A stretch of 64,000 nt of DNA from Macrostomum lignano (taxonomy: Eukaryota): the NCBI GenBank assembly GCA_002269645.1, contig NIVC01000405.1, forward strand, positions 62,001 to 126,000, given 5' to 3'. The number at the start of each line of letters is the position of its first letter. Position 1 is the stretch's first letter. This document shows, piece by piece, positions 8,401 through 63,239 of this stretch. Under the pieces are notes generated by a model that was not told the DNA's origin, searched no databases, and worked only from the letters and a program-made list of their open reading frames with translations. The translations under genes were made by a program, and so were the position numbers.

Positions 8401-11400
8401 GCCGGGAAGCAAGACAAGACAAAACCGGGGAAGAGAGGAGAGAAGGAGAGAAGGCGAGATCCGATTGCCAAAACACACTTTCATATATAGTCAAAGTCAC
8501 AACCCCTCAAAACCCCCCTCAAGCCGGGTGGTGGTCGTCTGGCCGGCCGCTTGCTTAAGCCGAATTGCACTGTACCCGCGGCGCCGGGTAGAATTGAAAC
8601 TTGCCGCGTGCCAGGGTCCAGGCCGGTTCTGATTGGCTGGCCGCGCAAAGCTAGGGTTCGCAGACAAAACTCAACCCTCCGCTGAGTCACAAATGGCGTC
8701 TAACTCTAACCTGTTTACGCAAAATTGATTCTAACTAACAAGGAAAAAGTACACCAAAAACGTATGACTAAACTAAAGCAAAATAACAATTCAATAACAA
8801 TAATGCAAAACCTAACTAATAGAATACAAGGCTATCGCAAAAGATGCTCACACTACAGGTGAGTCAGTGAATGGTTGAGTGAGTAAATGAATGAATGATT
8901 GAGTGAATGAATGAGTGGGTGAGTAAATGAATGAGTGTATGAGTAAGTGAATAAGTGAGTAAATCAATGAGTGAGTGAGTGATTGAGTGAGTGAGTGAGT
9001 GAGTGAGTGAGTGAGTGAGTGAGTGAGTGAGTGAGTGAGTGAGTGAGTGAGTAAGTAAGTAAGTGAGTGAGTGAGTAAGTAAGTGAGTGAGTGAGTGAGT
9101 GAGTGAGTGAGTGAGTGAGTGAATGGGTGAATGAATGAGTGAATGAGTGAGTTAATGAGTGAGTGAGTAAGTCAGCGAGTGAAAACGTGAATGAGTAAGT
9201 GAGTTATCTGATGGGTAGCTTCATAAGTGAATCGATTAGTGCGCTCTTACAACATATAAACTAAATAATAAATAAAAACTAGCACTGTTGTAACATCTCT
9301 ATCACATCTCTAGCTAGCTACTAAGAATAAGGATAATAGCAAATAATAGCAAAACTCGATCATCCGCAGCTGTTCCGCTCAGCCGCCATCGATGCAGCTG
9401 AACCCGCCATCGTATCGCCGATCGCAGAATCTTCACCAGCCTCAACAACAAGCTCGTCAATAAGATTGCTATCGACTTCGCTGAATCCTCACATACCTGG
9501 CGAAGTGGTTACTATGGACTCCAATCTGGTTGCTAAGCTGTGGGATACTCGCGGATTCGCAACCACCAGCGCCGCTTGTCGATGGAGCCGGCAGTTTCCA
9601 GCAGATCAGCTGGCTCCGTGGGCGCCAGGAGAAGCCTGGGCCAGCGCCAGCATCGGCGCCCATCATCGCAGCCTGATCTGCGTGGGCGGCCGCCTTGCCG
9701 AGCTCAGCGATCTGCGGTCGCCTCCGACAGCTGCCGCTGGCGTCCGGCTGCTTGAACTGCCGTCGGGCAAGTCGCCTGAGCGGCTTCGCTGTCGAGTCAG
9801 TGTGGGTCCGCACGGGCATCTGATCGGGTCGGAGGGCAACCTGAGACTTGTGGACGATAGAATGACAGGCAACCGGTGTTTGCTGCACACCAGGTGTCCG
9901 TTGCATGGGGCGCCCACCTTTGCCAGATGGCTGTCCGAGCCCAGCGAACTGCTGCTGCTTGGTGCTCAGGTGAGTCAGGCTGGAGTGATTCTCTGATTGG
10001 TCAGGCTGGAGTGGTTCTCTGATTGGTCAGGCTAGAGTGATTCTCTGATTGGTCAGGTGAGTGATTCTCTGATTGGTCAGGCTGGAGTGATTCTCTGATT
10101 GGTCAGGCTGGAGTGATTCTCTGATTGGTCAGGCTGGAGTGATTCTCTGATTGGTCAGGCTGGAGTGATTCTCTGATTGGTCAGGTGAGTGATTCTCTGA
10201 TTGGTCAGGCTGGAGTGATTCTCTGATTGGTCAGGCTGGAGTGATTCTCTGATTGGTCAGGCTGGAGTGGTTCTCTGATTGGTCAGGTGAGTGATTCTCT
10301 GATTGGTCAGGCTGGAGTGATTCTCTGATTGGTCAGGCTGGAGTGATTCTCTGATTGGTCAGGCTGGAGTGATTCTCTGATTGGTCAGGTGAGTGATTCT
10401 CTGATTGGTCAGGCTGGACTGATTCTCTGATTGGTCAGGCTGGAGTGATTCTCTGATTGGTCAGGCTGGAGTGATTCTCTGATTGGTCAGGCTGGAGTGA
10501 TTCTCTGATTGGTCAGGTGAGTGATTCTCTGATTGGTCAGGCTGGAGTGATTCTCTGATTGGTCAGGCTGGAGTGATTCTCTGATTGGTCAGGCTGGAGT
10601 GGTTCTCTGATTGGTCAGGTGAGTGATTCTCTGATTGGTCAGGCTGGAGTGATTCTCTGATTGGTCAGGCTGGAGTGATTCTCTGATTGGTCAGGCTGGA
10701 GTGATTCTCTGATTGGTCAGGTGAGTGATTCTCTGATTGGTCAGGCTGGAGTGATTCTCTGATTGGTCAGGCTGGAGTGATTCTCTGATTGGTCAGGCTG
10801 GAGTGATTCTCTGATTGGTCAGGCTGGAGTGATTCTCTGATTGGTCAGGTGAGTGATTTTCTGATTGGTCAGGTGAGTGATTCTCTGATTGGTCAGGTGA
10901 GTGATTCTCTAATTGGTCAGGTGAGTGATTCTCTGATTGTTCAGGTGAGTGATTCTCTGATTGGTCAGGTGAGTGATTCTCTGATTGGTCAGGTGAGTGA
11001 TTCTCTGATTGGTCAGGTGAGTGATTCTCTGATTGTTCAGGTGAGTGATTCTCTGATTGATCAGGTGAGTGATTCTCTGATTGGTCAGGCTGGAGTGATT
11101 CTCTGATTGGTCAGGCTGGAGTGATTCTCTGATTGGTCAGGCTGGAGTGATTCTCTGATTGGTCAGGTGAGTGATTTTCTGATTGGTCAGGTGAGTGATT
11201 CTCTGATTGGTCAGGTGAGTGATTCTCTAATTGGTCAGGTGAGTGATTCTCTGATTGGTCAGGTGAGTGATTCTCTGATTGGTCAGGTGAGTGATTCTCT
11301 GATTGTTCAGGTGAGTGATTCTCTGATTGATCAGGTGAGTGATTCTCTGATTGGTCAGGCTGGAGTGATTCTCTGATTGGTCAGGTGAGTGATTCTCTGA

Positions 11401-21284: not shown

Positions 21285-41873
<20,589 letters not shown>

Positions 41874-43813: not shown

Positions 43814-46800
43814 TCACGACCTTGGCGACGCCTGCGCAGCCGCTCTGCGGTTCATGTTGTTCAGAATGCCGGCGCAGAATCCGTCACCCAGAATGTTGAC
43901 CGCGGTGCGCTGATGATCGCTGCAAAGTGTCAGTTTTGAAATTTAAGGAATTCCTATTGTACCTGCAGTAAAAACTCTTACAATACTCAGTAGCTCTGTA
44001 GTGTCAGTAGCTCTGTAGTGTCAGTAGCTCTGTAGTGTCAGTAGCTCTGTAGTGTCAGTAGCTCTGTAGTGTCAGTAGCTCTGTAGTGTCAGTAGCTCTG
44101 TAGTGTCAGTAGCTCTGTAGTGTCAGTAGCTCTGTAGTGTCAGTAGCTCTGTAGTGTCAGTAGCTCTGTAGTGTCAGTAGCTCTATAATGTCTGTAGCTC
44201 TATAATGTCTGTAGCTCTATAATGTCTGTAGCTCTGTAGTGTCAGTAGCTCTGTAGTGTCAGTAGCTCTAACACCAATGTCAATAGCTAGTGTCAGTCAG
44301 GGTTACGAGCGTTAGCAGCTGTGTACTAAAAGCGTCAAATTTTGAAGCAGACTGCACAATCAGGCAGCTTACAGCAGCCAGTCGACCTTTGCTATCAGCG
44401 TGGTATCGTCAATTGGGAGGCCGAGAGCTGACACCACCATCGAAATAGTGGCCAGAGCTCCGCCAGGCAACCCGGCTGTGCCAATTGCTGCCAGGGTAGC
44501 CATCAGGCTGAAGCAGGTGATTAAGATTAAAATTGAAGCATTTCTTCATTCATCACATCCTCTTCAGGTAATTCCTTCTATTATTCTTTTTCCCCTTCTG
44601 TCTGTTCCCTCTTCTCCCCTTTTCTCCCATTTTCTCCATTTTTCTCCCTTTTCTCCCTTTTCTCCCTTTTCTCCCTTTTCTCCCTTTTTCTCCCCGTTTC
44701 TCCTTTTTCTCCCCTTTTCTCCCCTTTTCTCCCCTTTTCTCACCTTTTCTCCCCCTTTCTCCTTTTTCTCCCCTTTTCTCCCCTTTTCTCCCCTTTTCTC
44801 CCCTTTTCTCCCATTTTCTCCCCTTTTCTCCCAGTTTCTCCCCCTTTCTCCTTTTTCTCCCCTTTTCTCCCCTTTTCTCCCCTTTTCTCCCCTTTTCTCC
44901 CCTTTTCTCCCTTTTCTCCCTTTTCTCCCTTTTTCTCCCCGTTTCTCCTTTTCTCCCATTTTCTCCCCTTTTCTCCCCTTTTCTCCTCTTTTCTCCCCTT
45001 TTCTCCCATTTTCTCCCCCTTTCTCCTTTTTCTCCCCTTTTCTCCCCTTTTCTCCCCTTTTCTCCCATTTTCTCCCCTTTTCTCCCATTTTCTCCCCTTT
45101 TCTCCCCTTTTCTCCCCTTTTCTCCCCTTTTCTCCCATTTTCTCCCCCTTTCTCCTTTTTCTCCCCTTTTCTCCCCTTTTCTCCCCTTTTCTCCCCTTTG
45201 CTCCCCTTTTCTCCCCCTTTCTCCCCTTTTCTCCCCCTTTCTCCCCTTTTCCCTTTTTTCAATTTTTCTCCCTTTTTATCACACTTTCTCCCATTTTCCT
45301 CTCGACAGCTTACTTATTTTTCAGTCCTTCCCCAGCTCCTTTCCTACTTTCCCTTCCTCCACGGAAACTTTTTCCGCCTAACCCCCATCCCCACCCACCG
45401 CAAACCACAGATACTAGAATAACTAGATAGGCAACTCAGGCATGTATACTTAGTAAAACAGCATTTTCAGTTCACCAGCAAAGAGGAATTCATAACAAAG
45501 AGGAATAAAGAGGAATTCATTTTATAAAAATAAAGGCAGCTAAAAATGCCTTTGATAAGTTCAGAAGCTCAAAAAGCTTGCTAATTGGTTCAGCAATAAT
45601 GTACATTGGCCAGTCCAACTGAAATGTACATGGCCGCTTTAGGGTGGAATTCCGAGAGAAAGGCAATAAAAATTGGGGCGGGGCGGGAGTGGGTGGAATG
45701 GAATGGAAAGGCGCGGTTGAGGGTTTAAGCTGAAGGTAAGAGCCAATAAAATTAGCCGTGGCTTTAAGATTACATTAAAATGCTTCAGTTTAACTTACTA
45801 CTGAACTGAAAGTAGCTTACACGCAAATGTGCTGAGTGGCCCATCTAGTTATTCTACTTATCTGCGCCTCAAACAGGGCCCCCCAATCGCCAACGAACCT
45901 GACGGCTACGATTTCAAGCGCGCCAAGGGGCACCTCGTTAACCTGAGCGATGAATATCGTCGCTGCCGCCAGATACAGCGCAGTTCCGTTCATGTTCACA
46001 GTGACTCCGATGGGCAGCACGAACCGGGATATTTTCCTTTCAATGCCGTTGTTCTCCTCCAGACAGCGGGAGGTGATCGGAAGGGTGGCGGCAGACGAAG
46101 CCGTGCCCAGAGCGGTTATATAGGCTTGGAAGATGCCGCGAAAGAACTTGAATGGGTTGCTTCTAGCCAGGACAAAGTAGGACACAGCCTGCACTAGGCA
46201 GGAGTGCGTGAAGAGCCCAACTGATACAGTGGCACAGTACAGACCCAGGCTGCGGAGTGTGACACCTGGATCGTCCATTTGAATAGCTTGCTTCCCAATT
46301 AGGGAGAAAATTCCTATTGGCGAGCACCTGATCAAAATTTTTTTTGAAGAAAAATAAAGCAACGCTCGATGTTTAGCGTCACTCTCTTCTGTCACTCCCT
46401 TCCCTTCACTCCCTCCCTCCACTCCCATCCTTTCACTCACTTCTTTCACTCCCTTCCCTTCACTCCCTTAACTTCACTCCCTTCCCTTCACTCCCTCCCT
46501 CCACTCCCATCCTTTCACTCACTTCTTTTACTCCCTTCCCTTCACTCCCTTAACTTCACTCCCTTCCCTTCACTCCCTCCCTCCACTCCCATCCTTGCAC
46601 TCACTTATTTCACTCCCTTCCTTCACTCTCTTAACTTCACTCCCTTCCTTTCACTCTCTTAACTTCACTCCCTTCCTTTCACTCTCTTAACTTCACTCCC
46701 TTCCTTCACTCTCTTAACTTCACTCCCTTCCTTCACTCTCTTAACTTCACTCCCTTCCTTTCACTCTCTTAACTTCACTCCCTTCCTTTCACTCATCACT

Positions 46801-49536
46801 TCACTCCCTTCCCTTCACCCCTCCCTTAATTCCCTTCACTTCACCCCTCCATTCACTCCTTTCCCTTCACTCCCTCCTTTCACTCCCTTCCCTTCACTCC
46901 CTTCACTTCACTCCCTTCCCTTCACTCCCTTCACTTCACTCGCTTCCATTCACTCCCTTCCCTTCACTCCCTTCACTTCACTCGCTTCCCTTCACTCCCT
47001 TCCCTTCATGCACTTCAAATCACTTGCCACATAATAACTTTAACGAAGCGCATCACCACATTGTTAAGAATATTGAACAGGTCAATCACTGGCTGCGCCC
47101 TGTCGCCCATTTGTTTCACAACTAGAGCAAATATTATCGAAATGCACAGCATGCCTAAAAGATTCCGGAACTTGAATAGAAAATTAGTAAATTTATGAAT
47201 ATTAATACATTTTCATTGTCATATTTTCCCACTGGAACCACTCACCCAACACATTAGTTTCACTTTTACCAACAAGCATTGTGTCCAGAGCGAAGACGCT
47301 GTTGAACTTTCGAGTAATAGAAGTAATAGAATTATTTCGAGGTTCAGAAGAATTGTCACTTTCGCTAACCAATTTTGTTTCCACTAGATTAAAGGTGGCA
47401 ACCATAATGTTGTCCGGGAACAAATTACTAAAATGGGGTTACGATATCGCTTTAAAAAGGCTGACACAGTCTGTAGCTTAACCATAGCCAGTTTCACATA
47501 GTACCTATACGAGCTAACTTGGCCATAGACACTCCCTCACACAATGTGGCCTGGCCATAGACACTCCCACATACACTACATTCTGGCCATAGACACCCCC
47601 AACACTACATTCTGGCCATAGACACTCCCGCATACACTACATTCTGGCCATAGACACCCCCAACACTACATTCTGGCCATAGACACTCCCGCATACACTA
47701 CATTCTGGCCATAGGCACTCCCGCATACACTACATTCTGGCCATAGACACTCCCACACGCACTAAATTCTGGCCATAGACACTCCCACGCACACTACATT
47801 CTGGCCATAGACACTCACACACACACTACATTCTGGCCATAGACACTCCCACACGCACTAAATTCTGGCCATAGAAACTCCCACGCACACTACATCCTGG
47901 CCATAGACACTCCCACACACCCATAAGCAATCGGTAATTTAGAACCAGCCCAAAAGTGATTACAAGAATATTACACAGGAAAAATTCCTTACCGAAACAA
48001 GTCAAAAATATGATAAATTGTCCTATTAGAGCCACCGTGAATTCCAAATTCACCAATGTCCAATTGTCGCTTAATTTGGGAATTTCCCGGCTTAATTAGC
48101 ATGACAAACAGGATGCCAATCAGGACAGCTGACCAGTTTGTCAAGAAGCTGTATACCAGCGTGAACACGCCTAGTTTGCTTGAGTTGTTGGTGTTTAGAC
48201 TGCACAATCCTGGTGATTTAGTAATTATAGCTGCATGCACCTATTACTTACGAACTTATAAGCATAAACTTTTAAATACTTAGATGATGTATTTGATAAT
48301 CTGGATGTTGTGGCTGAGGATCTAGGCATTGTGTCCGTGGATCTGGATATTATGTCTCAGGATCTCGATATTGTGTCTGAGGATCTGGATATTGAGTCTG
48401 AGGATCTGGATATTGTGTCTGAGGATCTGGATATTGTGTCTGAGGATCTGGATATTGTATCTAGGGATCTCGATATTGTGTCTGAGGATCTGGATATTGT
48501 GTCTGAAGATCTGGATATTGTGTCTAGGGATCTGGATATTGTGTCTGAGGATCTGGATATTGTATCTAGGGATCTCGATATTGTGTCTGAGGATCTGGAT
48601 ATTGTGTCTGAAGATCTGGATATTGTGTCTAGGGATCTGGATATTGTGTCTGAGGATCTGGATATTGTATCTAGGGATCTCGATATTGTGTCTGAGGATC
48701 TGGATATTGTGTCTGAGGATCTAGGCATTGTGTCCGTGGATCTAGATATTGTGTCTCAGGATCTCGATATTGTGTCTCAGGATCTCGATATTGTGTCTGT
48801 GGATCTATTGAGAAAACTATTGGCCAGCATCAGAAAATAAAACAGATGTTCTTTGAGCCTAACCTGCGACCAAGGAGGACACAACCAGCGGCAGGACCAG
48901 CACCTTGAGCATCCGCATGAACAGTTCGCCTGGGTAGCCGATCAGCAGAACGGCCAGTGGACTTGGGTGAGCAGCTCGAACCAGCCAACCGAACGCTAAA
49001 CCCAGAAGCATTGAAAGCAGAGTCAGGGCTGTCAAAATGCCGACCTTATGCTGAGAGCAGCAAGTCGCGCATCTGTTGAATATTTTTCTACACCGCGATT
49101 GTCGCCGTCTGGATTTTCGTCTCGTTGGGTTGTCGCCGAATCGCCGATCTTGCTTAGGTACAAATAATGTTTTGGGTGTCGTTTGGGTCTCTAATCCAAG
49201 TGTCGTTTGGGTCTCTAATCCAAGTGTCGTTTGGGTCTCTAATCCTGGTGTCTTTGGAGTCTCTAATCCAGGTGTCTTTGGAGTCTCTAATCCAGGTGTC
49301 TTTGGAGTCTCTAATCCAGGTGTCTTTGGAGTCTCTAATCCAGGTGTCTTTGGAGTCTCTAATCCAGGTGTCTTTGGAGTCTCTAATCCAGGTGTCTTTG
49401 GAGTCTCTAATCCAGGCGTCGTCTGAGTCTCTAATCCAGATGTCTTTGGAGTGTCCAATCCCGGCGTTTTTCTTGTCTCCAATCGAAGTTTTGAAGTTAA
49501 TTCGGAAATGTTAAAACTAACTGTTTTTCGTTTCAT
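43814..49536 (-). CDS. SLC1/EAAT family transporter paralog A (divergent), about 622 aa, 7 exons
   Basis: Exons 49536-48864, 48209-47993, 47427-47246, 47154-47028, 46327-45899, 44507-44373, 43919-43814 (1869 nt = 623 codons). Motifs PGELFMRML..LPLVVSSL, DLFRNLFPDN, TASSAATLP, NMNGTALYL, VDWLLDHQRTAVNILGD. Confidence 0.9.
43990..44270. repeat. 17-bp minisatellite (TCAGTAGCTCTGTAGTG), EAAT-A intron 6
   Basis: Direct inspection. Confidence 0.9.
44590..45300. repeat. CT-rich (TTCTCCCC)n low-complexity tract, EAAT-A intron 5
   Basis: Direct inspection; source of the GEK/collagen-like ORFs. Confidence 0.95.
46390..47010. repeat. (CTTCACTCC)-based degenerate repeat, EAAT-A intron 4
   Basis: Direct inspection. 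Confidence 0.9.
47520..47915. repeat. About 32-bp minisatellite (CACTACATTCTGGCCATAGACACTCCC...), EAAT-A intron 2
   Basis: Direct inspection. Confidence 0.9.
48305..48805. repeat. 21-bp minisatellite (GATCTGGATATTGTGTCTGAG), EAAT-A intron 1
   Basis: Direct inspection; gives the DLDIVSE ORF. Confidence 0.95.
49170..49470 (-). repeat. Coding 24-bp minisatellite encoding about 12 x KTPGLETP in the EAAT-A N-terminus
   Basis: In frame between ATG 49536 and TM1. Confidence 0.85.
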
Positions 49537-50536: not shown

Positions 50537-53500
50537 CTAAGCCTCTTCATCATTAAAATCGAGGAGTTCAGAGTCTGCAATAAAAGGGTGTTTGAAACTT
50601 TATCGAATCTGCGCTGTTTTAAAAACAAACTATTGCCTCTTACCTGTCTGTAATTGGTCTGTAGCGTCTGCAGTGACAGCCGCTGACTGTTCAGCTGCAC
50701 GGGTTTTGCACAGGTGATCCACAATGCCTGCTCCGAATGCGTCACCGAGCACGTTCACTGATGTGCGCAGACGGTCGCTGGATATGAAGGTGATCGCTGG
50801 GTCATACAGGTGGTCATGCAGGTGTCTAACAGGTGGTCTAACAGGTGGTCTAACAGGTGGTCTAAAAGGTGGTCTAACAGGTGGTCTAACAGGTGGTCTA
50901 ACAGGTGGTCTAACAGGTGGTCTAACAGGTGGTCTAACAGGGCTTCTAACAGGTGGTCTAACAGGTGGTCTAACAGGTGGTCTAACAGGTGGTCTAACAG
51001 ATGGTCTAACAGGTGGTCTAACAGGTGGTCTAACAGGTGGTCTAACAGGTGGTCTAACAGGGCTTCTAACAGGTGGTCTAACAGGTGGTCCAACAGGGTG
51101 TCTAACAGGTGCTCTTTCAGGTTGTTAAATAGGTGTCTAACACGGATCTAAAAGGGAGTCTAAAAGAGGATCCAACAAGTGTCGAAAAGGGCTTTAACAG
51201 GGGTGTAAAGCTCCTGAACAGGTATATAACAGGTGTCTTACAGGTAATAGTTGTTTCTGACAGGCGTTTATAATATTATCTCGATATAATAGAACTATTT
51301 TAGTATGGCTTATTTTATATTGTCATGGTTAACCATTACTGCCATGTACTAAATAAATTATAATAGCTTTAACGGTCTTACAGCAGCCAGTCCACTGTCA
51401 ATATAAGCGAGATTTCGTTGACTGGCAGTCCAACCGACGACAGCACAATCACCATGGTAACAATGCCGGCACTGGGGATGCTAGCAGCGCCTGTGGCGGC
51501 AAGGGTTGCCGTGAACCTAAATAGTGCATCGGGTGGCAGTTAGCGAACGGCGAGAGGCAACAGTGGCTGAGAGTCTAAAATGTATAAAAAATTATCTAGG
51601 AGGGCTGCAGCCACCTCCGTGGCGCAACGCCTTCGGTGAAATCCACATGCGGCCCACGAAGCCTCTCTATCCGGCCCTCGGGTCCATGAATCTTCACAAA
51701 AGCAATCCGACCCGCTCAATGTTTGTGTCTCTTCTCAGGTCTCCTCTCCTCCTCTCTCCACTCATCTACACTCTCATCTCTCATCTTTAATCTCACCTCT
51801 CTCCTCTCCCCACCTCGCTCCTCTCCCCACCTCGCTCCTCTCCCCACCTCTCTCCTCTCCCCACCTCTCTCCTCTCCCCACCTCGCTCCTCTCCCCACCT
51901 CGCTCCTCTCCCCACCTCGCTCCTCTCCCCACCTCGCTCCTCTCCCCACCTCGCTCCTCTCCCCACCTCTCTCCTCTCCCCACCTCGCTCCTCTCCCCAC
52001 CTCTCTCCTCTCCCCACCTCTCTCCTCTCCCCACCTCTCTCCTCTCCCCACCTCGCTCCTCTCCCCACCTCTCTCCTCTCCCCACCTCGCTCCTCTCCCC
52101 ACCTCTCTCCTCTCATATCCCTTCCCTCCTCTCCCCTTCCTCTCTCCCCTCTCCTCTTTCTTCTCTCCTTTCTCCCCTCATCTTCCCTCTCTCCTCTCTC
52201 CAGTCATACGCTAGATTTTATATCTGGCCCTTACGTTGAAAAAGTTTGCTGACCCTTGTAATCTAAATCGTCAGTCATGTACAATCCAGCTCTGTGCCTA
52301 GGGGGTTCCCACAACAACACCCAGGTTAAATTTCGCGCATTTAGTTGCAGTTGATTCTCTCACGCAATAACGGTTATTTGACCAGCGCTCAGACTGATAC
52401 CGTTAACCTGAGCAATGAAGATGCAGGCCACAGCCTCGTACAGCGCTGTGCCGTCCATGTTGAGCGTGGCTCCGACTGGCAGAACAAACCGAGTGACGGT
52501 CCTGTCGATGCCGTTGTTCTCCTCCAAGCACTTGAACGTGACTGGCAGCGTCGCCGAGGAAGACGCGGTGGCCAGAGCGGTGACCCAGGCTTGGAGCACG
52601 CCGCGAAAGAACACTACAGGATTCTTGCGGGTCAAGGCCAGGTAAATCAGTGCCAAGGTGACGCAGGCATGAACCAACAGACCGGCTGTCACGGTGGCCA
52701 TGTACAGGCCCAAACTCCTCAGCGTAGCCTCCAGATTCTTCGCTTCGAGAATTTTACCCGCTAGTAGAAAGAAAATACCTATTGGCGTGTACCTGTTTTG
52801 GTGTAGTGATCAAAAGAGTTGTGACTTTGATATATATAGCCTTTGGGTTATGAGCACATCCTCATGTTATGATTACGATTACGATTACGATAACGATAAA
52901 ATCATAAAATCATTTTATGATTATGAGCACATCATCATTTGATGATTATGAGCACATCCTCATTTTATTATTATGAGCACATCCTCATTTTATTATTATG
53001 AGCACATCCTCATTTGATGATTATGAGCACATCCTCATTTTATGATTATGAGCACATCCTCATTTTATTATTATGAGCACATCCTCATTTTATTATTATG
53101 AGCACATCCTCATTTGATGATTATGAGCACATCCTCATTTTATTATTATGAGCACATCCTCATTTTATTATTATGAGCACATCCTCATTTGATGATTATG
53201 AGCACATCCTCATTTTATGATTATGAGCACATCCTCATTTTGTGATTATGAGCACATCCTCATTTGATGATTATGAGCACATCCTCATTTTATAATTATG
53301 AGCACATCCTCATTTGATGATTATGAGCACATCCTCATTTTATTATTATGAGCACATCCTCATTTTATGATTATGAGCACATCCTCATTTTGTGATTATG
53401 AGCACATCATCATTTTATGATTATGAGCACATCCTCATTTTGTGATTATGAGCACATCCTCATTTTATGATTATGAGCATTTTCTCATTTCATGATTATG

Positions 53501-56500
53501 AGCAAATCATCATTTCATTATTATGAGCACATTCTCATTTCATGATTATGAGCAAATCATCATTTTATGATTATGAGCACATCCTCATTTTGTGATTATG
53601 AGCACATCCTCATTTGATGATTATGAGCACATCCTCATTTTATAATTATGAGCACATCCCCATTTTATGATTATGAGCACATCCTCATTTTATTATTATG
53701 AGCAAATCATCATTTTATGATTGAGCACATTCTCATTTCATGATTATGAGCACATTCTCATTTCATGATTATGAGCAAATCATCATTTTATGATTATGAG
53801 CACATCCTCATTTTAAGATTATGAGCATTTTCTCACTTTATGATTTTGAGTACATGCTAAACTATTAGTTATGAGCATATAAGATCGGCTATAAAATAAA
53901 CCCAGAAAGATGCACAGATCTGATACTCAATAAACTCACCATATAATGGCTCTCAGCATTAGCATAACCACATCGTTGATTATGTTGAACAATCGAACTA
54001 ACAGCAAAGCACTGTCGCCCATTCGCCTAATGACGATTCCAATAAATATGGACACAGAGACCAAGCCTAAAGTGCAATAATATTATTCATACTCAACATA
54101 TTGCAGCCTAGTATAATAAGATAGGGAAACAGTGAATGCAAAAATTCACCCAAAGCGTTAAATCCATCAACAGTGGTGACCTTAAATGTCTGACTTATTT
54201 CCCATCCAGTAGAATTGTCAGCATTTAAAACAGTTTTATTCTTGGTTGTGACAACTGTGGCGGTCCGCCGGAAGCAGGCTTCCACTAAATTATCCGGAAC
54301 CAAATTTCTGCAACAATGAACCAAGTACTACTCAAATAGAAGGACGGGGCACTACGTTTCTGAAAAAAACTTCGCTGAAAAAGAATCAGGTTTTCGCCGA
54401 AAAATACACTACGGAGATAAGAGCTACGGAGGTAGACCCAATGCTCATCTTTTGATATGCTGTGCCTTTCTTATACCTGGTAGCTCCATTGATATTTATA
54501 AAGCTTTTCGTTCAGAAAATTAGGATTCTATGTTAATTTTTATTCTACGTACAAATTGCATATGTCCCGTGCCTAAAAACCATTAAATGGCACGGCTCGG
54601 CTTATTAGTTTTATGAATCTATTCTGTCATTGTTAGCTCACTGTGTAACAATAGCTATGTGTAACAAAGATGATAAAATTGATTCATAAAACCATAGTCG
54701 AACTTTGCCATGCATTTTAATGATTTTAGGCACAAGAAGTGTATTCATAAATGTATTAATAAATGCATTTAAGAATATCAATAGAGCTATAACAAAGGCA
54801 CAACATATCAAAAGATGAACATTCGTTCTGCCTCCAATCCAAAGCAATAACAATTTTAATATGGAAAAAAGTGAACAGCTATTATGTCCGTAATGTTTTT
54901 TTTTCGGCGAAAACCAGCATCCTTACTCATTTCCCGTCCTCCTACTTGAGTAGTCCATGCATTAAACTTTTAATCAATCTAATTTATTTTGAATCGATTT
55001 ATAAAGCAACATAACGCTAGCTAGACAATTGCGATTACCTCAACAGGTCAAGAATTGCATGCAGAGTATCAGTGTAGGAGCCAATCTCAGTGACAGCGTT
55101 GCTCTGAAGCTTTTCTACCGGACTTCCGGGTTGAATAACCATGACAAATACGATGCCCAAAGCTGTGGCAGAGAATGTGGTCACTGTGTAATAGGCTACC
55201 GTGATCAGACCGATTCTGCCGAATGATCCCGCATTAAGATTTGGTAATCCTGAAATGGAATATTGTTTCTAGTGCGACGCGTCAAGCCTGGCTCTAAAGC
55301 CGGCAGGTACACAGCAATTTTAGTTGAAGGAACCGCAAACTTTTGGGTTGACAATATTTGGTCTCTTGGTGGGCGATCCTGTCTCATTGTGGGCGCCACT
55401 GTCTCATGATGGGCGCCCCTGTCTCATGATGGACGCCCCTGTCTCATAATGGGCGCCCCTGTCTCATGATGGACGCCCCTGTCTCATGATGGGCGCCCCT
55501 GTCTCATGATGGACGCCCCTGTCTCATGATAAGCGCTCCTGGGACTTTTTCAAGTTTAATGTTGATAAAATAGTTTCAATTTTGATAGGATCATAATTTT
55601 GTCTCTAAAGGGGTTTTTGATGGTGCTGATTTCAAATTTGAGCTCCATTTTTAGGTAGCTTTAACCCAATTATATGTAGCTTAAAACCAACCACCGGGGC
55701 ATGAGGAATGGGGGGTTTTAGGGTGGGGAGATTCTTCATGGGGATTGATTTTATCAACATAAACTTGAATAGAGGCATAGAGACCTATTCAAGATTGTGT
55801 TGATAAATTCCAATTCTAATAGGGAGGAGGGTTGTAGCTTAAAACCAACTACCAGGGCATGGGGAATAGGGGGTTTTAGGGTGGGGAGATTTTTCATGAG
55901 GATTGATTTTATCAACATAAACTTGAATAGAGGCATGGAGACCTATTCAAGATTGTGCTGACAAATTCCAATTCTAATAGGGGGGAGGGGTTGTAACTCT
56001 ACGACACGAGAAAAGAGAGAATCCACCAAAGAGTCAACATAATTATGTCAGAAGTTGGTTGAATTCTATAACTTTATCTAAATGAATTTGCTTACCAAAA
56101 TCAGGTGCTGTTACTTCCTTAATACAATAGAATTAGTAATCTAGCCTTGTACAGTAATTGGTTTTGAGGAGCGAAATGCTTTAAGGTTGCGAACATTGCT
56201 TTGGCTGGGTGCAGTGAAAGTGGTAGTGCAAACATTGAGCCGGTCGTGACAGTTTTTAAAAAAAGCAAACAATGACATGGCACTGTCTATGCATTATAAC
56301 TAAATTGAAAAACTATTATCAGCCAACGTAAAAGACAATTGCATGTTAATTTGTAGATATTATTATTCATCTTTAATTGGCCTAATGAAGTTCTAGCACA
56401 TGTGCTATTAGATTAAAATCTAGTGGATACACTTTCAAAAATGTATTCGTGGAAACGTTTTCTCACCGAACGTCATTAAGAGAATAGGGAATCGAGTAAA

Positions 56501-57252
56501 TCGTGATTGCATCAACTATAAAGGTAATTTTCTACACTTCTTTTGCATTTTTATAATTTTGGGTGCCCCATAAGTCTCCAATGCAAGTTTTAGAAAAATC
56601 GAAAAATCAGAAGTATTTTATCAACATAAACTTGAAGAAGTCCCGCCCCTGTCTCATGATGGGCGCCCCTGTCTCATGATGGGCGCCCCTGTCTCATGAC
56701 GGACGCCCCTGTCTCATGATGGGCGCCCCTGTCTCATGATGGGCGCCCCAGTCTCTTGGTTATTGAGTTAAAAATCATCACCGAAAATGTCACAGAAGAA
56801 TGCTTATTGAGGTCGAGGATGAGCAAATGAAATTATGAAATCAGTTTGATTCAATCGATCTCACCAACAATCAGAGACGAAACCACCAGCGGAATGGTCA
56901 TCATTTTAAACATGTTCATCATCAGAACGCCCGGGAAACCAATTATCAGTATGGTTCGATCGCTTAGATTGACATTACGGAGCAGTGCTCCGATCATTGA
57001 GCCAAGCACTACAGCTAGTACGGTGAGCATGGTTAAAATGTTGTCAGTGTTGCGAAACCAGCTGACAACAATTGCTTCTTGAGATTCTGCTGCTTGCTGT
57101 TGCTGCTGATGAGGCGTTTGTCGATGTTGCTGCTGTTCTACCGGCTGCTGCTCAACTTTCCGTTCAGGTTCGCTATCGATGACGAAGTCCTGTCTCTGCA
57201 ATTGCTTCGATTCGCCCGACTGAATGCTTGGACTTTTATCCGGTTCCACCAT
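50537..57252 (-). CDS. SLC1/EAAT glutamate transporter paralog B (canonical TM7/TM8 motifs), about 539 aa, 8 exons
   Basis: Exons 57252-56865, 55249-55039, 54307-54150, 54066-53940, 52792-52364, 51516-51382, 50777-50644, 50574-50537 (1620 nt = 540 codons). Motifs [52 protein letters not shown]. The start ATG is inferred as the first in-frame ATG. Confidence 0.9.
50820..51110. repeat. 12-bp minisatellite (GGTCTAACAGGT), EAAT-B intron 6
   Basis: Direct inspection. Confidence 0.95.
51560..52200 (+). mobile_element. Second copy of the LINE-like 3' end with a CT tail (17-bp CTCCTCTCCCCACCTCG units), EAAT-B intron 5
   Basis: Homology to 1-78; the 5' boundary is uncertain. Confidence 0.5.
52930..53830. 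repeat. 25-bp minisatellite (GAGCACATCCTCATTTTATTATTAT), EAAT-B intron 4
   Basis: Direct inspection. Confidence 0.95.
54327..54954. mobile_element. MITE-like element with imperfect terminal inverted repeats, EAAT-B intron 2
   Basis: ACTACTCAAATAGAAGGACGGG...GGTTTTCGCCGAAAAATACACTACGGA on the left is mirrored by TCCGTAATG...TTTTCGGCGAAAACC...CCCGTCCTCCTACTTGAGTAGT on the right. No clear TSD. Confidence 0.55.
55400..55540. repeat. 20-bp minisatellite (GGGCGCCCCTGTCTCATGAT), left part
   Basis: Direct inspection. Confidence 0.9.
55541..56644. mobile_element. Non-autonomous TIR element (about 1.1 kb) splitting the 20-bp minisatellite
   Basis: Left end GGGACTTTTTCAAGTTTAATGTTGATAAAAT (55541-55571) is the near-perfect reverse complement of right end ATTTTATCAACATAAACTTGAAGAAGTCCC (56615-56644). 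Internal tandem duplication of about 165 bp (about 55675-56000). Confidence 0.7.
56645..56755. repeat. 20-bp minisatellite, right part
   Basis: Same unit as 55400-55540. Confidence 0.9.
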
Positions 57253-62691: not shown

Positions 62692-63076
62692 TCAATACAT
62701 TGGCTGCTCAACTCGCAGCTCGTTGCCTAGCGACCGCTGCCTGCCAGAATTGGTGGCCGGCGCCGTTTCTATGGCTACGGCCGGGTACAAACCTCTCTGA
62801 TGGTGCTGCTCGTTGATCTGCAGAGCCGCGGCCACGCTGAGTCGGCGAGGCTGTCGAGAGTCGCTAGGGCGTCTGGTGCCACCGGCGCTGCTGCCGCCGC
62901 CTCCGCCGCCGCTAAACGAAGCCGTTTCCATGGCAACAGCGGCAGCTTCCATCGCTTCGCGAGCCTCGGCGGCCGCTTCGGCGTCCTGCTTTTGCAGCTC
63001 GCCCCGGCAGAAATGGTCCACAATGCCAGCACCGAAGGCGTCGCCCACAACGTTGATTGACGTCCTCATCCGGTCT
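62692..63076 (-). CDS. SLC1/EAAT paralog C, terminal exon only (rest beyond the window)
   Basis: Acceptor CCCCAG|A then [23 protein letters not shown]...*. Same phase-2 intron position as in paralogs A and B. Confidence 0.85.
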
Positions 63077-63239
63077 CTGGGGGTGCGTTGGGCAAGTTTT
63101 AATGAAACTAAATTGACAAAACCAAAGGAAATTTAATTTTGTTTTAGAAAAAAGGAAAATTGTATTCCTAAACTCTCGAAAAAGTGAGTAAAATACTTTT
63201 TGTCATACATAGAGTAACGCTTATGAGGGGGATTTAATG

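What the first reader, a model, noticed from the sequence alone, without database searches (positions are those of the whole stretch)
43814..49536. Intact EAAT paralog that has lost the Na+ and H+/K+ coupling residues while keeping the acidic-substrate site
Seen: a full 7-exon ORF with no lesions. TM7 reads NMNGTALYLAAA, whereas neighbour B has [14 protein letters not shown]8 reads DHQRTAVNILGD (B: DRLRT; C: DRMRT). HP2 is remodelled (GTAGLPGGAL vs GAASIPSAG). Established: the NMDGT Asp (GltPh D312, rat EAAC1 D367) binds Na+; the downstream Glu (EAAC1 E373, GLT-1 E404) is the proton acceptor needed for K+ countertransport; EAAC1 R445 influences cation coupling; the side-chain-carboxylate Arg (EAAC1 R447, GltPh R397) and the TM8 Asp residues are retained here. 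Inference: three simultaneous substitutions in an otherwise preserved gene suggest a neofunctionalised SLC1 - an uncoupled exchanger, a glutamate-gated anion channel or sensor, or a regulatory subunit of heterotrimers with its neighbours.
Basis: partly seen in the sequence, partly recalled or inferred. Interest (0 to 1): 0.8.

Follow-up and report, generated by a model that had tools for sequence, protein, structure and literature searches.

The report
Divergent flatworm glutamate-transporter paralog, coupling residues lost
A transcribed, intact but fast-evolving extra copy of a glutamate-transporter gene in the flatworm Macrostomum lignano has replaced the residues that normally tie glutamate uptake to one sodium ion, a proton and potassium, so it probably does not work like a standard glutamate pump, although whether it has a new job or is drifting towards loss cannot yet be told.

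Summary
On the minus strand, 49536-43814 holds a 7-exon, 622-aa SLC1 (EAAT-type) gene. It reads NMNGTALYL in TM7, DHQRT in TM8 and IGTAGLPGGA in HP2. Tandem neighbour B and the last exon of C are canonical. The window is Macrostomum lignano contig NIVC01000405.1, and the gene is GenBank Mlig009731.g2, a "hypothetical protein" whose model derives from transcripts.

Two further near-identical copies in the assembly carry the same codons, so these are not sequencing errors.

The gene is not "otherwise preserved". It is the fastest-evolving of the paralogs: it differs at 25 of 121 positions invariant in 43 other animal EAATs, spread evenly over both domains. Further changes include a second Na3 ligand (T249N), Y245S, A508V and a unique Lys583.

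Selection evidence is mixed:
- Long-term dN/dS against B is about 0.3 or less.
- The three recent copies differ by 6 nonsynonymous and 1 synonymous change.
- One copy has a frameshift.

D-to-N at NMD recurs naturally in bacteria, Acanthamoeba and a rotifer, but never with E-to-L and R-to-H.

Best reading (about 0.5): an expressed, lineage-specific SLC1 that still binds acidic amino acids, keeps Na1 and Na2, and is H+/K+-independent. Main rival: relaxed constraint.

The parts
48864..49536 (-). Exon 1 of paralog A. It holds the ATG at 49536, a disordered N-terminal tail with a TPGLETPK repeat, then TM1 and TM2. The donor is AG|GTTAGG.
   Evidence: The AF2 model gives pLDDT below 50 for the first ~110 residues.
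49175..49461 (-). Coding 24-nt minisatellite with 12 units here. Copy number differs among the three genomic copies, giving proteins of 622, 590 and 694 aa.
47993..48209 (-). Exon 2, containing TM3. The Na3-site motif YSFLTN lies at 48153-48136, where canonical EAATs read YY..TT. It carries Y245S and T249N.
47246..47427 (-). Exon 3, the TM4 extracellular-loop region.
47028..47154 (-). Exon 4 (TM4c and TM5 start). It is followed by a GC-AG intron with donor TG|GCAAGT at 47027-47022.
   Evidence: The same donor is present in copies L002 and L003. The transcript-derived protein reads VIMWCSPIG across this junction.
45899..46327 (-). Exon 5: TM5, TM6, HP1 (GTASSAATLP) and TM7. NMNGTALYL lies at 45996-45970. 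It carries A508V, N513 in place of the Na3 Asp, and L519 in place of the proton-carrier Glu.
44373..44507 (-). Exon 6: HP2 and the start of TM8. The HP2 tip GTAGLPGGAL lies at 44482-44453. Lys583 is at 44389-44387 and D585 at 44383-44381.
43814..43919 (-). Exon 7, the rest of TM8. DHQRT lies at 43918-43904, with H590, R592, N596 and D600. A short C-terminus follows, with stop TGA at 43816-43814.
50630..57252 (-). Paralog B: 7 exons, 531 aa, with the same exon phases as A. All coupling residues are canonical ([29 protein letters not shown]). It is not in the GenBank annotation.
62695..63090 (-). Last coding exon of paralog C (Mlig001421.g4), a canonical EAAT reading DRMRT. The rest of the gene lies beyond the window end.

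Best explanation
Paralog A is a real, transcribed SLC1 gene restricted, as far as the searchable data show, to Macrostomum. It arose within the local tandem array C-B-A and then evolved about three times faster than its canonical relative.

It keeps the EAAT fold. It also keeps every side chain that binds an acidic amino acid (D585, D589, R592, T593, N596, HP1 SS motif), the Na1 Asp (D600) and the Na2 Met (M512).

It has neutralised the two buried carboxylates that make an EAAT a 3Na+/1H+/1K+ pump:
- The Na3 Asp is now Asn513. The neighbouring Na3 ligand Thr is now Asn249, and the Tyr that aligns with GltPh Y89 (whose carbonyl ligates Na3) is now Ser245.
- The proton-carrier Glu is now Leu519.

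Electrostatically the transport domain looks like an EAAT with Na3 and the proton permanently bound.

Inference: the protein still binds glutamate or aspartate with one or two Na+, but it cannot couple to H+ or use K+ for the return step. It would then act as a low-stoichiometry carrier or obligate exchanger, possibly with a substrate-gated anion conductance, and not as a concentrative pump.

What is shown: the sequence anatomy, the transcript-derived gene model, the fold, and the accelerated but ORF-preserving evolution. What is inferred: the transport mode.
For: - Gene model and family.
- Identity with GenBank PAA83797.1 (Mlig009731.g2), whose annotation pipeline used only RNA-seq-derived transcripts.
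- The same codons occur in three genomic copies.
- All six introns keep their splice signals in all three copies.
- The AF2 core has pLDDT 80-96. Foldseek gives TM-score 0.93-0.94 and rmsd 2.0-2.1 A to EAAT3 and ASCT2 intermediate outward-facing structures.
- Long-term A-B divergence is dN 0.45 against dS about 1.5 (saturated), with no stop codon in about 500 codons despite about 54% amino-acid divergence.
- Codons 327-622, which include the transport core, are identical in all three copies. Clean columns of the flanking introns 3-6 show 10 changes in 2410 nt, giving P=0.025 for zero exon changes.
- Binding-site residues are retained while Na3 and H+ residues are replaced.
- Functional meaning of D367 and E373/E374: PMC2151618 and PMC10160106.
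- D-to-N at NMD recurs in apparently intact natural homologs from Nitrospirales, Planctomycetota, Acanthamoeba and the rotifer Seison. In those proteins it covaries with a change at the same TM3 Tyr that is altered in A. An NMN transporter is therefore a viable natural form.
Against: - No functional assay exists.
- No ortholog outside M. lignano could be retrieved, so lineage-specific dN/dS could not be computed.
- Among the three recent copies the variable codons are 6 nonsynonymous to 1 synonymous. This fits neutrality (P=0.44) and is marginally inconsistent with omega=0.3 (P=0.046). B shows 8:9.
- One copy (g3) has a +1 frameshift in exon 1.
- Changes at conserved positions are as frequent in the transport domain as in the scaffold domain (30% each). 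B spares the transport domain (12%). This is the pattern expected from a general loss of constraint on transport.
- In mammalian EAATs, D367N and E373Q each abolish net uptake.
- Expression is inferred from the annotation method. It was not seen directly in reads or expression tables.
Confidence: 0.5

Rival explanations
1. Relaxed constraint. A is a redundant duplicate in a neopolyploid, highly duplicated genome. It has lost its transport function and is drifting. It is still transcribed and still open, but is on its way to becoming a pseudogene.
For: - A has the longest branch of the paralogs (0.57, against 0.38 for B and 0.19 for C).
- It differs at 25 of 121 columns invariant in other animal EAATs.
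- Changes are spread uniformly over the scaffold and transport domains.
- The recent copies differ by 6N:1S.
- Copy g3 is frameshifted.
- Residues essential for net uptake in mammalian EAATs are replaced.
- The assembly has 180-312 Mb of duplicated sequence (PMC5730564).
Against: - A roughly 500-codon ORF and all six introns' splice signals survive about 54% amino-acid divergence from the nearest paralog. That is not expected without long-term purifying selection; long-term dN/dS is about 0.3 or less.
- Every substrate-contacting side chain and the Na1 and Na2 residues are intact.
- The C-terminal 296 codons are identical in three copies (P=0.025).
- The g3 frameshift could be a PacBio indel error.
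- Changes cluster on one ion site (Y245S, T249N and D513N all at Na3). This looks like coordinated remodelling.
Confidence: 0.27
2. A is still a Na+-coupled concentrative acidic amino-acid transporter. A neutral Na3 site built from Asn249, Asn511, Asn513, Thr248 and a backbone carbonyl still binds Na+. A prokaryote-like HP2 (IGTAGLPGGA, compared with GltPh IGTAGVPGAG as recalled from memory) lets the empty carrier return without K+, as in GltPh.
For: - Na1 (D600, N596) and Na2 (M512) are intact.
- Archaeal homologs lack the Glu (they carry Gln) and cycle without K+ or H+ (PMC10160106).
- NMN-type homologs are widespread enough to be functional.
- The T-to-N change adds a carbonyl ligand at the site where the carboxylate was lost.
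Against: - Leu cannot make the hydrogen bond to HP2b that Gln or protonated Glu makes to close the gate.
- EAAC1 D367N mainly lowers Na+ affinity of the empty carrier and stops cycling.
- No natural NMN homolog seen here also lacks the Glu or Gln, apart from single clusters reading NMNGTALFA and NMNGTALYQ.
Confidence: 0.13
3. A is a non-transporting partner. It would be a regulatory protomer in heterotrimers with B or C, or a substrate-gated anion channel or sensor.
For: - The genes lie in tandem and share exon structure with B.
- EAAC1 E373Q keeps substrate-activated anion current while net uptake is lost.
- The substrate site is retained.
Against: - The trimerisation (scaffold) domain is as diverged as the rest (21/68), which does not favour conserved heteromeric contacts.
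- There are no co-expression data.
- B is not even in the transcript-derived annotation.
- Nothing here tests anion conduction.
Confidence: 0.1

Closest known systems
Animal excitatory amino acid transporters (SLC1A1-3/6/7; human EAAT2 is the best PDB sequence hit, EAAT3 the best fold hit)
   Same: - Pfam SDF.
- 42-45% identity.
- Same fold (TM-score 0.93).
- HP1 SS motif, Tyr518, the DxxxDxxR motif, Thr593, Asn596, Asp600 and the Na2 Met are all present.
   Different: - NMD is NMN.
- YE is YL.
- The TM3 motif YY..TT is YS..TN.
- DR(F/M/L)RT is DHQRT.
- The HP2 tip AAS(I/V)PSAG is TAGLPGGA.
- Lys583 and Val508 are present.
- A differs at 25 of 121 positions invariant in 43 other animal EAATs.
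Engineered EAAT mutants: EAAC1 D367N, EAAC1 E373Q (GLT-1 E404D recalled from memory), EAAC1 R445 mutants
   Same: A carries natural equivalents of all three positions at once. The single mutants lose net uptake but keep substrate binding, exchange and anion current (PMC2151618; PMC10160106).
   Different: - A has Leu, not Gln or Asp, at the Glu position.
- A has His at position 445. R445E has only a modest effect (PMC2151622).
- A has many additional background changes that could compensate.
ASCT1/ASCT2 (SLC1A4/5) obligate Na+-dependent exchangers
   Same: The proton-carrier Glu is neutral. In ASCT2 it is Gln (NMDGAALFQ), recalled from memory; one search printed no ASCT alignment. The outcome predicted for A is H+- and K+-independent exchange.
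   Different: - ASCTs keep the NMD Asp.
- ASCTs replace the substrate Arg447 with Thr or Cys (from memory), giving neutral substrates. A keeps the Arg, implying acidic substrates.
- A is phylogenetically an EAAT-type Macrostomum paralog.
Prokaryotic Na+-uncoupled and H+-coupled glutamate-transporter homologs (AncInt/ExtInt and ExtH clades; PMC12668577)
   Same: They set a precedent that members of this family lose Na+ coupling and afterwards lose Na+-binding residues.
   Different: The H+-clade signature ([T/S]92 to hydrophobic, M311L, D405N) is absent from A, which keeps T248, M512 and D600. A is an animal gene that lost a different site (Na3: D312N and S93N in GltPh numbering).
Natural NMN-type SLC1 homologs (Nitrospirales and Planctomycetota MAGs, Acanthamoeba castellanii XP_004336040, rotifer Seison nebaliae KAI3381182)
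   Same: Asp-to-Asn in the NMD motif, accompanied by a change at the second Tyr of the TM3 YY pair. That Tyr is Phe in 16 of 19 NMN-type proteins, against 16 of 102 NMD-type proteins.
   Different: They keep the Glu and, in 15 of 19, the first TM8 Arg (Met in the other 4); the second TM3 ligand is Thr/Ser in 16 of 19 (Met in 3). None has Lys583. A does not belong to their clade. It groups with Macrostomum paralogs, so the D-to-N change is convergent.

Membership tests
SLC1 / DAACS (Pfam PF00375, sodium:dicarboxylate symporter family) | Profile match above the curated cut-off over the full domain | tested here: met
   328.5 bits against a cut-off of 27.9. Residues 168-609 match profile positions 1-386 of 387.
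SLC1 / DAACS | 8-TM plus two re-entrant hairpins elevator fold | tested here: met
   The AF2 core has pLDDT 80-96. Foldseek gives TM-score 0.93-0.94 and rmsd about 2 A to EAAT3 and ASCT2.
Concentrative EAAT (3 Na+ / 1 H+ in, 1 K+ out) | Arg in TM8 that binds the side-chain carboxylate (EAAC1 R447), plus D444, T448 and N451 | tested here: met
   R592, D589, T593 and N596 are present.
Concentrative EAAT (3 Na+ / 1 H+ in, 1 K+ out) | Na3 site: the Asp of the NMD motif and the two TM3 hydroxyl ligands | tested here: not met
   N513 replaces the Asp. T248 is kept but the second ligand is N249. The adjacent Tyr is S245. All three genomic copies agree.
Concentrative EAAT (3 Na+ / 1 H+ in, 1 K+ out) | Proton-carrier Glu of the YE motif (EAAT3 E374) | tested here: not met
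   L519 (CTG), two nucleotide changes from GAG. Role of the Glu per PMC10160106.
Concentrative EAAT (3 Na+ / 1 H+ in, 1 K+ out) | Na1 Asp (EAAC1 D454/455) and Na2 Met of NMD | tested here: met
   D600 and M512 are present.
Concentrative EAAT (3 Na+ / 1 H+ in, 1 K+ out) | Measured stoichiometry and K+-dependent return step | not testable with these tools
   Needs flux and electrophysiology measurements.
ASCT-type neutral amino-acid exchanger | Substrate Arg replaced by Thr or Cys, with the NMD Asp retained | tested here: not met
   A keeps R592 and has NMN.
Prokaryotic H+-coupled clade (GltP/GltT/DctA type) | Signature [T/S]92 to hydrophobic, M311L, D405N (PMC12668577) | tested here: not met
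   A has T248, M512 and D600.
Processed or unitary pseudogene | Stops, frameshifts or lost splice sites | tested here: not met
   There are none in the window copy or in copy g1. Copy g3 has one +1 insertion in exon 1, which may be an assembly error.
Processed or unitary pseudogene | dN/dS about 1 and no transcripts | tested here: inconclusive
   - Recent copies differ by 6N:1S, with low power.
- Long-term dN/dS is about 0.3 or less.
- The gene model is transcript-derived, but reads were not inspected.

The most novel reading that the evidence does not exclude
A would be the first animal SLC1 protein that has naturally shed both the Na3 carboxylate and the proton/K+ switch while keeping the glutamate site. 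That would make it a facilitative or 1-2 Na+ glutamate/aspartate carrier or exchanger, or a glutamate-gated anion channel. It would have evolved by permanently mimicking the Na3- and H+-bound state, and it would parallel an unstudied, recurrent NMN class in bacteria, amoebae and rotifers.
Probability: 0.25. Interest if true: 0.7.

Novelty: new variant of a known kind. Interest (0 to 1): 0.45.

Why it matters
How ion coupling is wired into glutamate transporters, and how it changes in evolution, is an active question. PMC12668577 traced the loss of Na+ coupling in prokaryotes. PMC10160106 attributes eukaryotic H+/K+ coupling to one Gln-to-Glu change.

A natural animal paralog does the following at once:
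- It neutralises that Asp together with a second Na3 ligand.
- It replaces the proton-carrier Glu with Leu.
- It keeps the acidic-substrate site.

It sits next to two canonical paralogs that can serve as internal controls. This makes it a ready-made natural experiment for testing which residues set stoichiometry. If it turns out to be decaying, it is an ordinary by-product of the heavy gene duplication in M. lignano.

Tried and rejected
- **Orthologs.** A full-length search returned nothing between 100% (the three M. lignano copies) and 51% identity. A search with the C-terminal 124 aa returned no fragment above 59% identity.
- **Control for that search.** The same C-terminal region of canonical paralog C also returned no M. 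lignano fragments. This part of the database therefore does not sample M. lignano transcripts, and the negative result says nothing about expression.
- **Gene IDs in the literature.** Mlig009731, Mlig001421 and Mlig005305 were absent from full text and from the supplements of three M. lignano expression papers.
- **dN/dS from the three genomic copies.** There are too few differences (7 variable codons). Apparent intron divergence of 2-9% in introns 1-2 is largely misaligned tandem repeats. Only introns 3-6 (about 0.3%) are usable.
- **Sequencing error at the key codons.** Rejected, because three copies agree.
- **Alternative donor AT|GTGGCA for intron 4.** Rejected. It would delete the conserved Trp, and the transcript-derived protein reads VIMWCSPIG.
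- **Membership of the H+-coupled prokaryotic type or of the ASCT type.** Rejected on signature residues.
- **Position of Lys583 relative to the ion sites.** Could not be examined, because the structure tool returns no coordinates.
Full report
**What is there**

The minus strand between 49536 and 43814 contains seven open exon segments. Joined at their splice signals, they give a 1869-nt CDS encoding 622 aa. The exon coordinates are:
- 49536-48864
- 48209-47993
- 47427-47246
- 47154-47028
- 46327-45899
- 44507-44373
- 43919-43814

Five introns are GT-AG. Intron 4 is GC-AG, with the strong donor TG|GCAAGT. Paralog B has TG|GTGAGT at the same position.

The protein matches Pfam SDF (PF00375) at 328.5 bits. 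It matches human EAAT2, EAAT1 and EAAT3 structures at E=1e-107 to 3e-116.

The first ~130 residues form a tail with no family match. The tail carries a 24-nt coding minisatellite of TPGLETPK units at 49175-49461.

Upstream on the same strand lies paralog B (57252-50630). It has seven exons with the same phases and encodes 531 aa. Further upstream is the last exon of paralog C, near 63075.

**Where it comes from**

The window is identical to Macrostomum lignano assembly Mlig_3_7, contig NIVC01000405.1, positions 62001-126000.
- A is GenBank PAA83797.1 (BOX15_Mlig009731g2, "hypothetical protein"; UniProt A0A267GEC6, "Amino acid transporter"). That model equals mine except for four fewer repeat units.
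- C is Mlig001421.g4.
- B has no GenBank protein. The accessions for A and C are consecutive.

The GenBank annotation of this assembly was built only from RNA-seq-derived transcripts (StringTie/TACO plus a de novo transcriptome; PMC5730564). The A model, including the GC-AG junction, therefore rests on transcript evidence. I did not see the reads themselves.

**Check of the quoted residues**

TM7 reads NMNGTALYLAAA, TM8 reads DHQRTAVNILGD and the HP2 tip reads GTAGLPGGAL. B reads [17 protein letters not shown] and [10 protein letters not shown] reads DRMRT.

Alignment to human EAAT2 gives these equivalences:
- N513 = D399 (EAAC1 D367)
- L519 = E405 (EAAC1 E373)
- H590 = R476 (EAAC1 R445)
- R592 = R478 (EAAC1 R447)

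D585, D589, T593, N596 and D600 are retained.

The literature supports the assigned roles:
- D367 is involved in Na+ binding to the empty carrier (PMC2151618).
- E373 is the protonation site, and E373Q abolishes net transport while exchange and anion current remain (PMC2151618).
- E374 pairs with R447 in the apo and K+-bound states. When protonated it hydrogen-bonds to HP2b and closes the gate (PMC10160106).
- R445E had only a modest effect on uptake (PMC2151622).

A is not otherwise preserved.
- Against 121 EAAT-type relatives, A differs at 60 of 197 columns that are at least 95% conserved. B differs at 37 of 200 and C at 2 of 198.
- Against 43 taxonomically broad animal EAATs, A differs at 25 of the 121 columns invariant among them.

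Several of these changes bear on ion sites or gating:
- Y245S and T249N lie in the TM3 motif that supplies Na3 ligands (GltPh Y89 and S93).
- A508V lies next to the Na1 and Na2 backbone ligands.
- Six HP2 positions are changed.
- A583K puts a Lys into TM8. It was not seen in any of roughly 250 sequences compared.

The Na3 site has therefore changed at three positions at once, and the transport core has lost two buried negative charges.

A's changes are spread evenly: 21 of 68 conserved scaffold columns and 39 of 130 transport-domain columns. B spares the transport domain, with 16 of 130 against 19 of 68.

**Evolutionary position**

In a neighbour-joining tree on 446 ungapped columns, A and B pair with 76% bootstrap. 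This pairing may be long-branch attraction. Together they sit next to C and its paralog Mlig005305, inside the flatworm group. Terminal branch lengths are 0.57 for A and 0.38 for B, against 0.19 in total for C.

No sequence between 100% and 51% identity to A exists in the protein collection.

**Is it under selection?**

Long-term evidence. Over 437 aligned codons, A against B gives dN=0.45 and dS about 1.5, which is saturated. The reading frame and all six introns' splice signals are intact. This cannot be reconciled with long neutral decay.

Short-term evidence. Two further copies exist. Copy g1 is on NIVC01000362.1. Copy g3 is about 150 kb away on the same contig, in inverted orientation.
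- All key codons are identical in all three copies.
- After the repeat, the three copies differ at 7 codons, 6 nonsynonymous and 1 synonymous. All 7 lie in codons 161-326.
- Codons 327-622 are identical. Clean columns of introns 3-6 show a total of 10 changes in 2410 nt, giving P=0.025 for zero exon changes.
- The 6:1 ratio fits neutrality (P=0.44). It is marginally inconsistent with omega=0.3 (P=0.046).
- B shows 8:9. The difference between A and B is not significant (Fisher P=0.17).
- Copy g3 has a +1 insertion in exon 1, CTGC[G]CGCTGG. This could be a real lesion or an assembly indel.

Overall, the long-term evidence says the gene has been functional. The recent evidence is underpowered and slightly worrying.

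**Structure**

An AlphaFold2 model of the annotated protein, built with 43 homologs, has pLDDT 80-96 across the SDF core. The HP2 tip falls to about 69, and the first ~110 residues are below 50. Foldseek places the model on EAAT3 and ASCT2 intermediate outward-facing structures at TM-score 0.93-0.94 and rmsd 2.0-2.1 A.

**Natural precedents**

NMNGT variants turned up among fragments sharing words with A. An exhaustive search with one of them found NMN in 21 of 148 cluster representatives.

Named members come from Nitrospirales and Planctomycetota MAGs, Acanthamoeba castellanii and the rotifer Seison nebaliae. One fragment sits in a bacterial gene neighbourhood.

These proteins keep the Glu and, in most cases, the first TM8 Arg (Met in 4 of 19). 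They covary at the second TM3 Tyr, which is Phe in 16 of 19 NMN-type proteins against 16 of 102 NMD-type proteins. A has changed the same position, to Ser.

The D-to-N change is therefore a recurrent and presumably viable variant. The combination seen in A is unique here.

The signature of prokaryotic H+-coupled homologs (T92 to hydrophobic, M311L, D405N; PMC12668577) is absent from A.

**Mechanism proposed (inference)**

Neutralising the Na3 Asp and the proton-carrier Glu makes the transport domain electrostatically resemble an EAAT with Na3 and H+ already bound. A complete acidic-substrate site and intact Na1 and Na2 determinants remain.

The expected behaviour is Na+-dependent binding of Glu or Asp, without H+ co-transport or K+-driven return. 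That corresponds to exchange or low-stoichiometry carriage, possibly with a substrate-gated anion conductance.

I put this at about 0.5. The rivals are:
- Relaxed constraint or incipient pseudogene: about 0.27.
- A still-concentrative Na+ symporter with a neutral Na3 site and prokaryote-like gating: about 0.13.
- A regulatory or channel-only protomer: about 0.1.

**Verdict**

This is a new variant of a known kind. It is interesting as a natural experiment in SLC1 ion coupling. That interest is tempered by four points:
- It is known from a single species.
- It is evolving fast.
- Evidence for recent constraint is weak.
- There are no functional data.

Noticed in passing
window 50630-57252 (-): Paralog B is an intact 7-exon SLC1 gene of 531 aa with all canonical coupling residues. 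It has no protein in the GenBank annotation. Its three genomic copies differ by 8 nonsynonymous and 9 synonymous changes (omega about 0.3). Its scaffold domain is much more diverged than its transport domain.
   Followed up: partly
window 49175-49461 (-), and the same region in L002 and L003: A 24-nt coding minisatellite (TPGLETPK) lies in the cytoplasmic N-terminus of A. Its copy number differs among the three genomic copies, giving proteins of 622, 590 and 694 aa. The GenBank model for this locus (590 aa) has four fewer units than the genome sequence encodes.
   Followed up: partly
window 47022-47027 (-): Intron 4 of A uses a GC-AG splice pair with donor GCAAGT, conserved in all three copies. 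The homologous intron of B uses GT.
   Followed up: yes
L003 about 9310-9320 (contig NIVC01000405.1, copy g3): Copy g3 of A has a one-base insertion, CTGC[G]CGCTGG, in exon 1, inside the conserved LPLVVSS motif of TM2. This explains why GenBank annotates only a 362-aa product there. It could be a real frameshift or a long-read indel error.
   Followed up: partly
contig NIVC01000405.1: A g2 at 105814-111536 (-) and A g3 at about 256984-262860 (+; annotated CDS from 258530): The B-A pair, and by annotation order also C, is present twice on the same contig in inverted orientation about 150 kb apart. It occurs a third time on NIVC01000362.1. This fits the known large-scale duplication of the DV1 genome, or an assembly of homeologs.
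   Followed up: partly
window 43987-44269, 44607-45298, 46392-47016, 47520-47920, 48299-48806: Five of A's six introns (all but the 91-nt intron 3) are largely filled with tandem arrays of period 10, 14/82, 17, 21 and 32 nt. These create long spurious ORFs on both strands and inflate apparent intron divergence between copies.
   Followed up: partly
window 55250-56864 (B intron 1): B intron 1 is 1615 nt in the window copy but 485 and 425 nt in the other two copies. This is an insertion or expansion of about 1.1 kb specific to this copy.
   Followed up: no
window about 32956-35495 (-): Two large open segments match the SID-1 dsRNA-gated channel family (PF13965; E=4e-60 and 4e-53). A SID-1-like gene lies downstream of A.
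   Followed up: no
proteins P0249, P0265, P0316, P0388, P0409 and others (not in the window): A recurrent natural class of SLC1 homologs reads NMNGT instead of NMDGT. It occurs in Nitrospirales, Planctomycetota, Acanthamoeba and the rotifer Seison. The change covaries with Tyr-to-Phe at the second Tyr of the TM3 YY pair. The few literature searches run here did not come across a description of this class, though none of them targeted it.
   Followed up: partly
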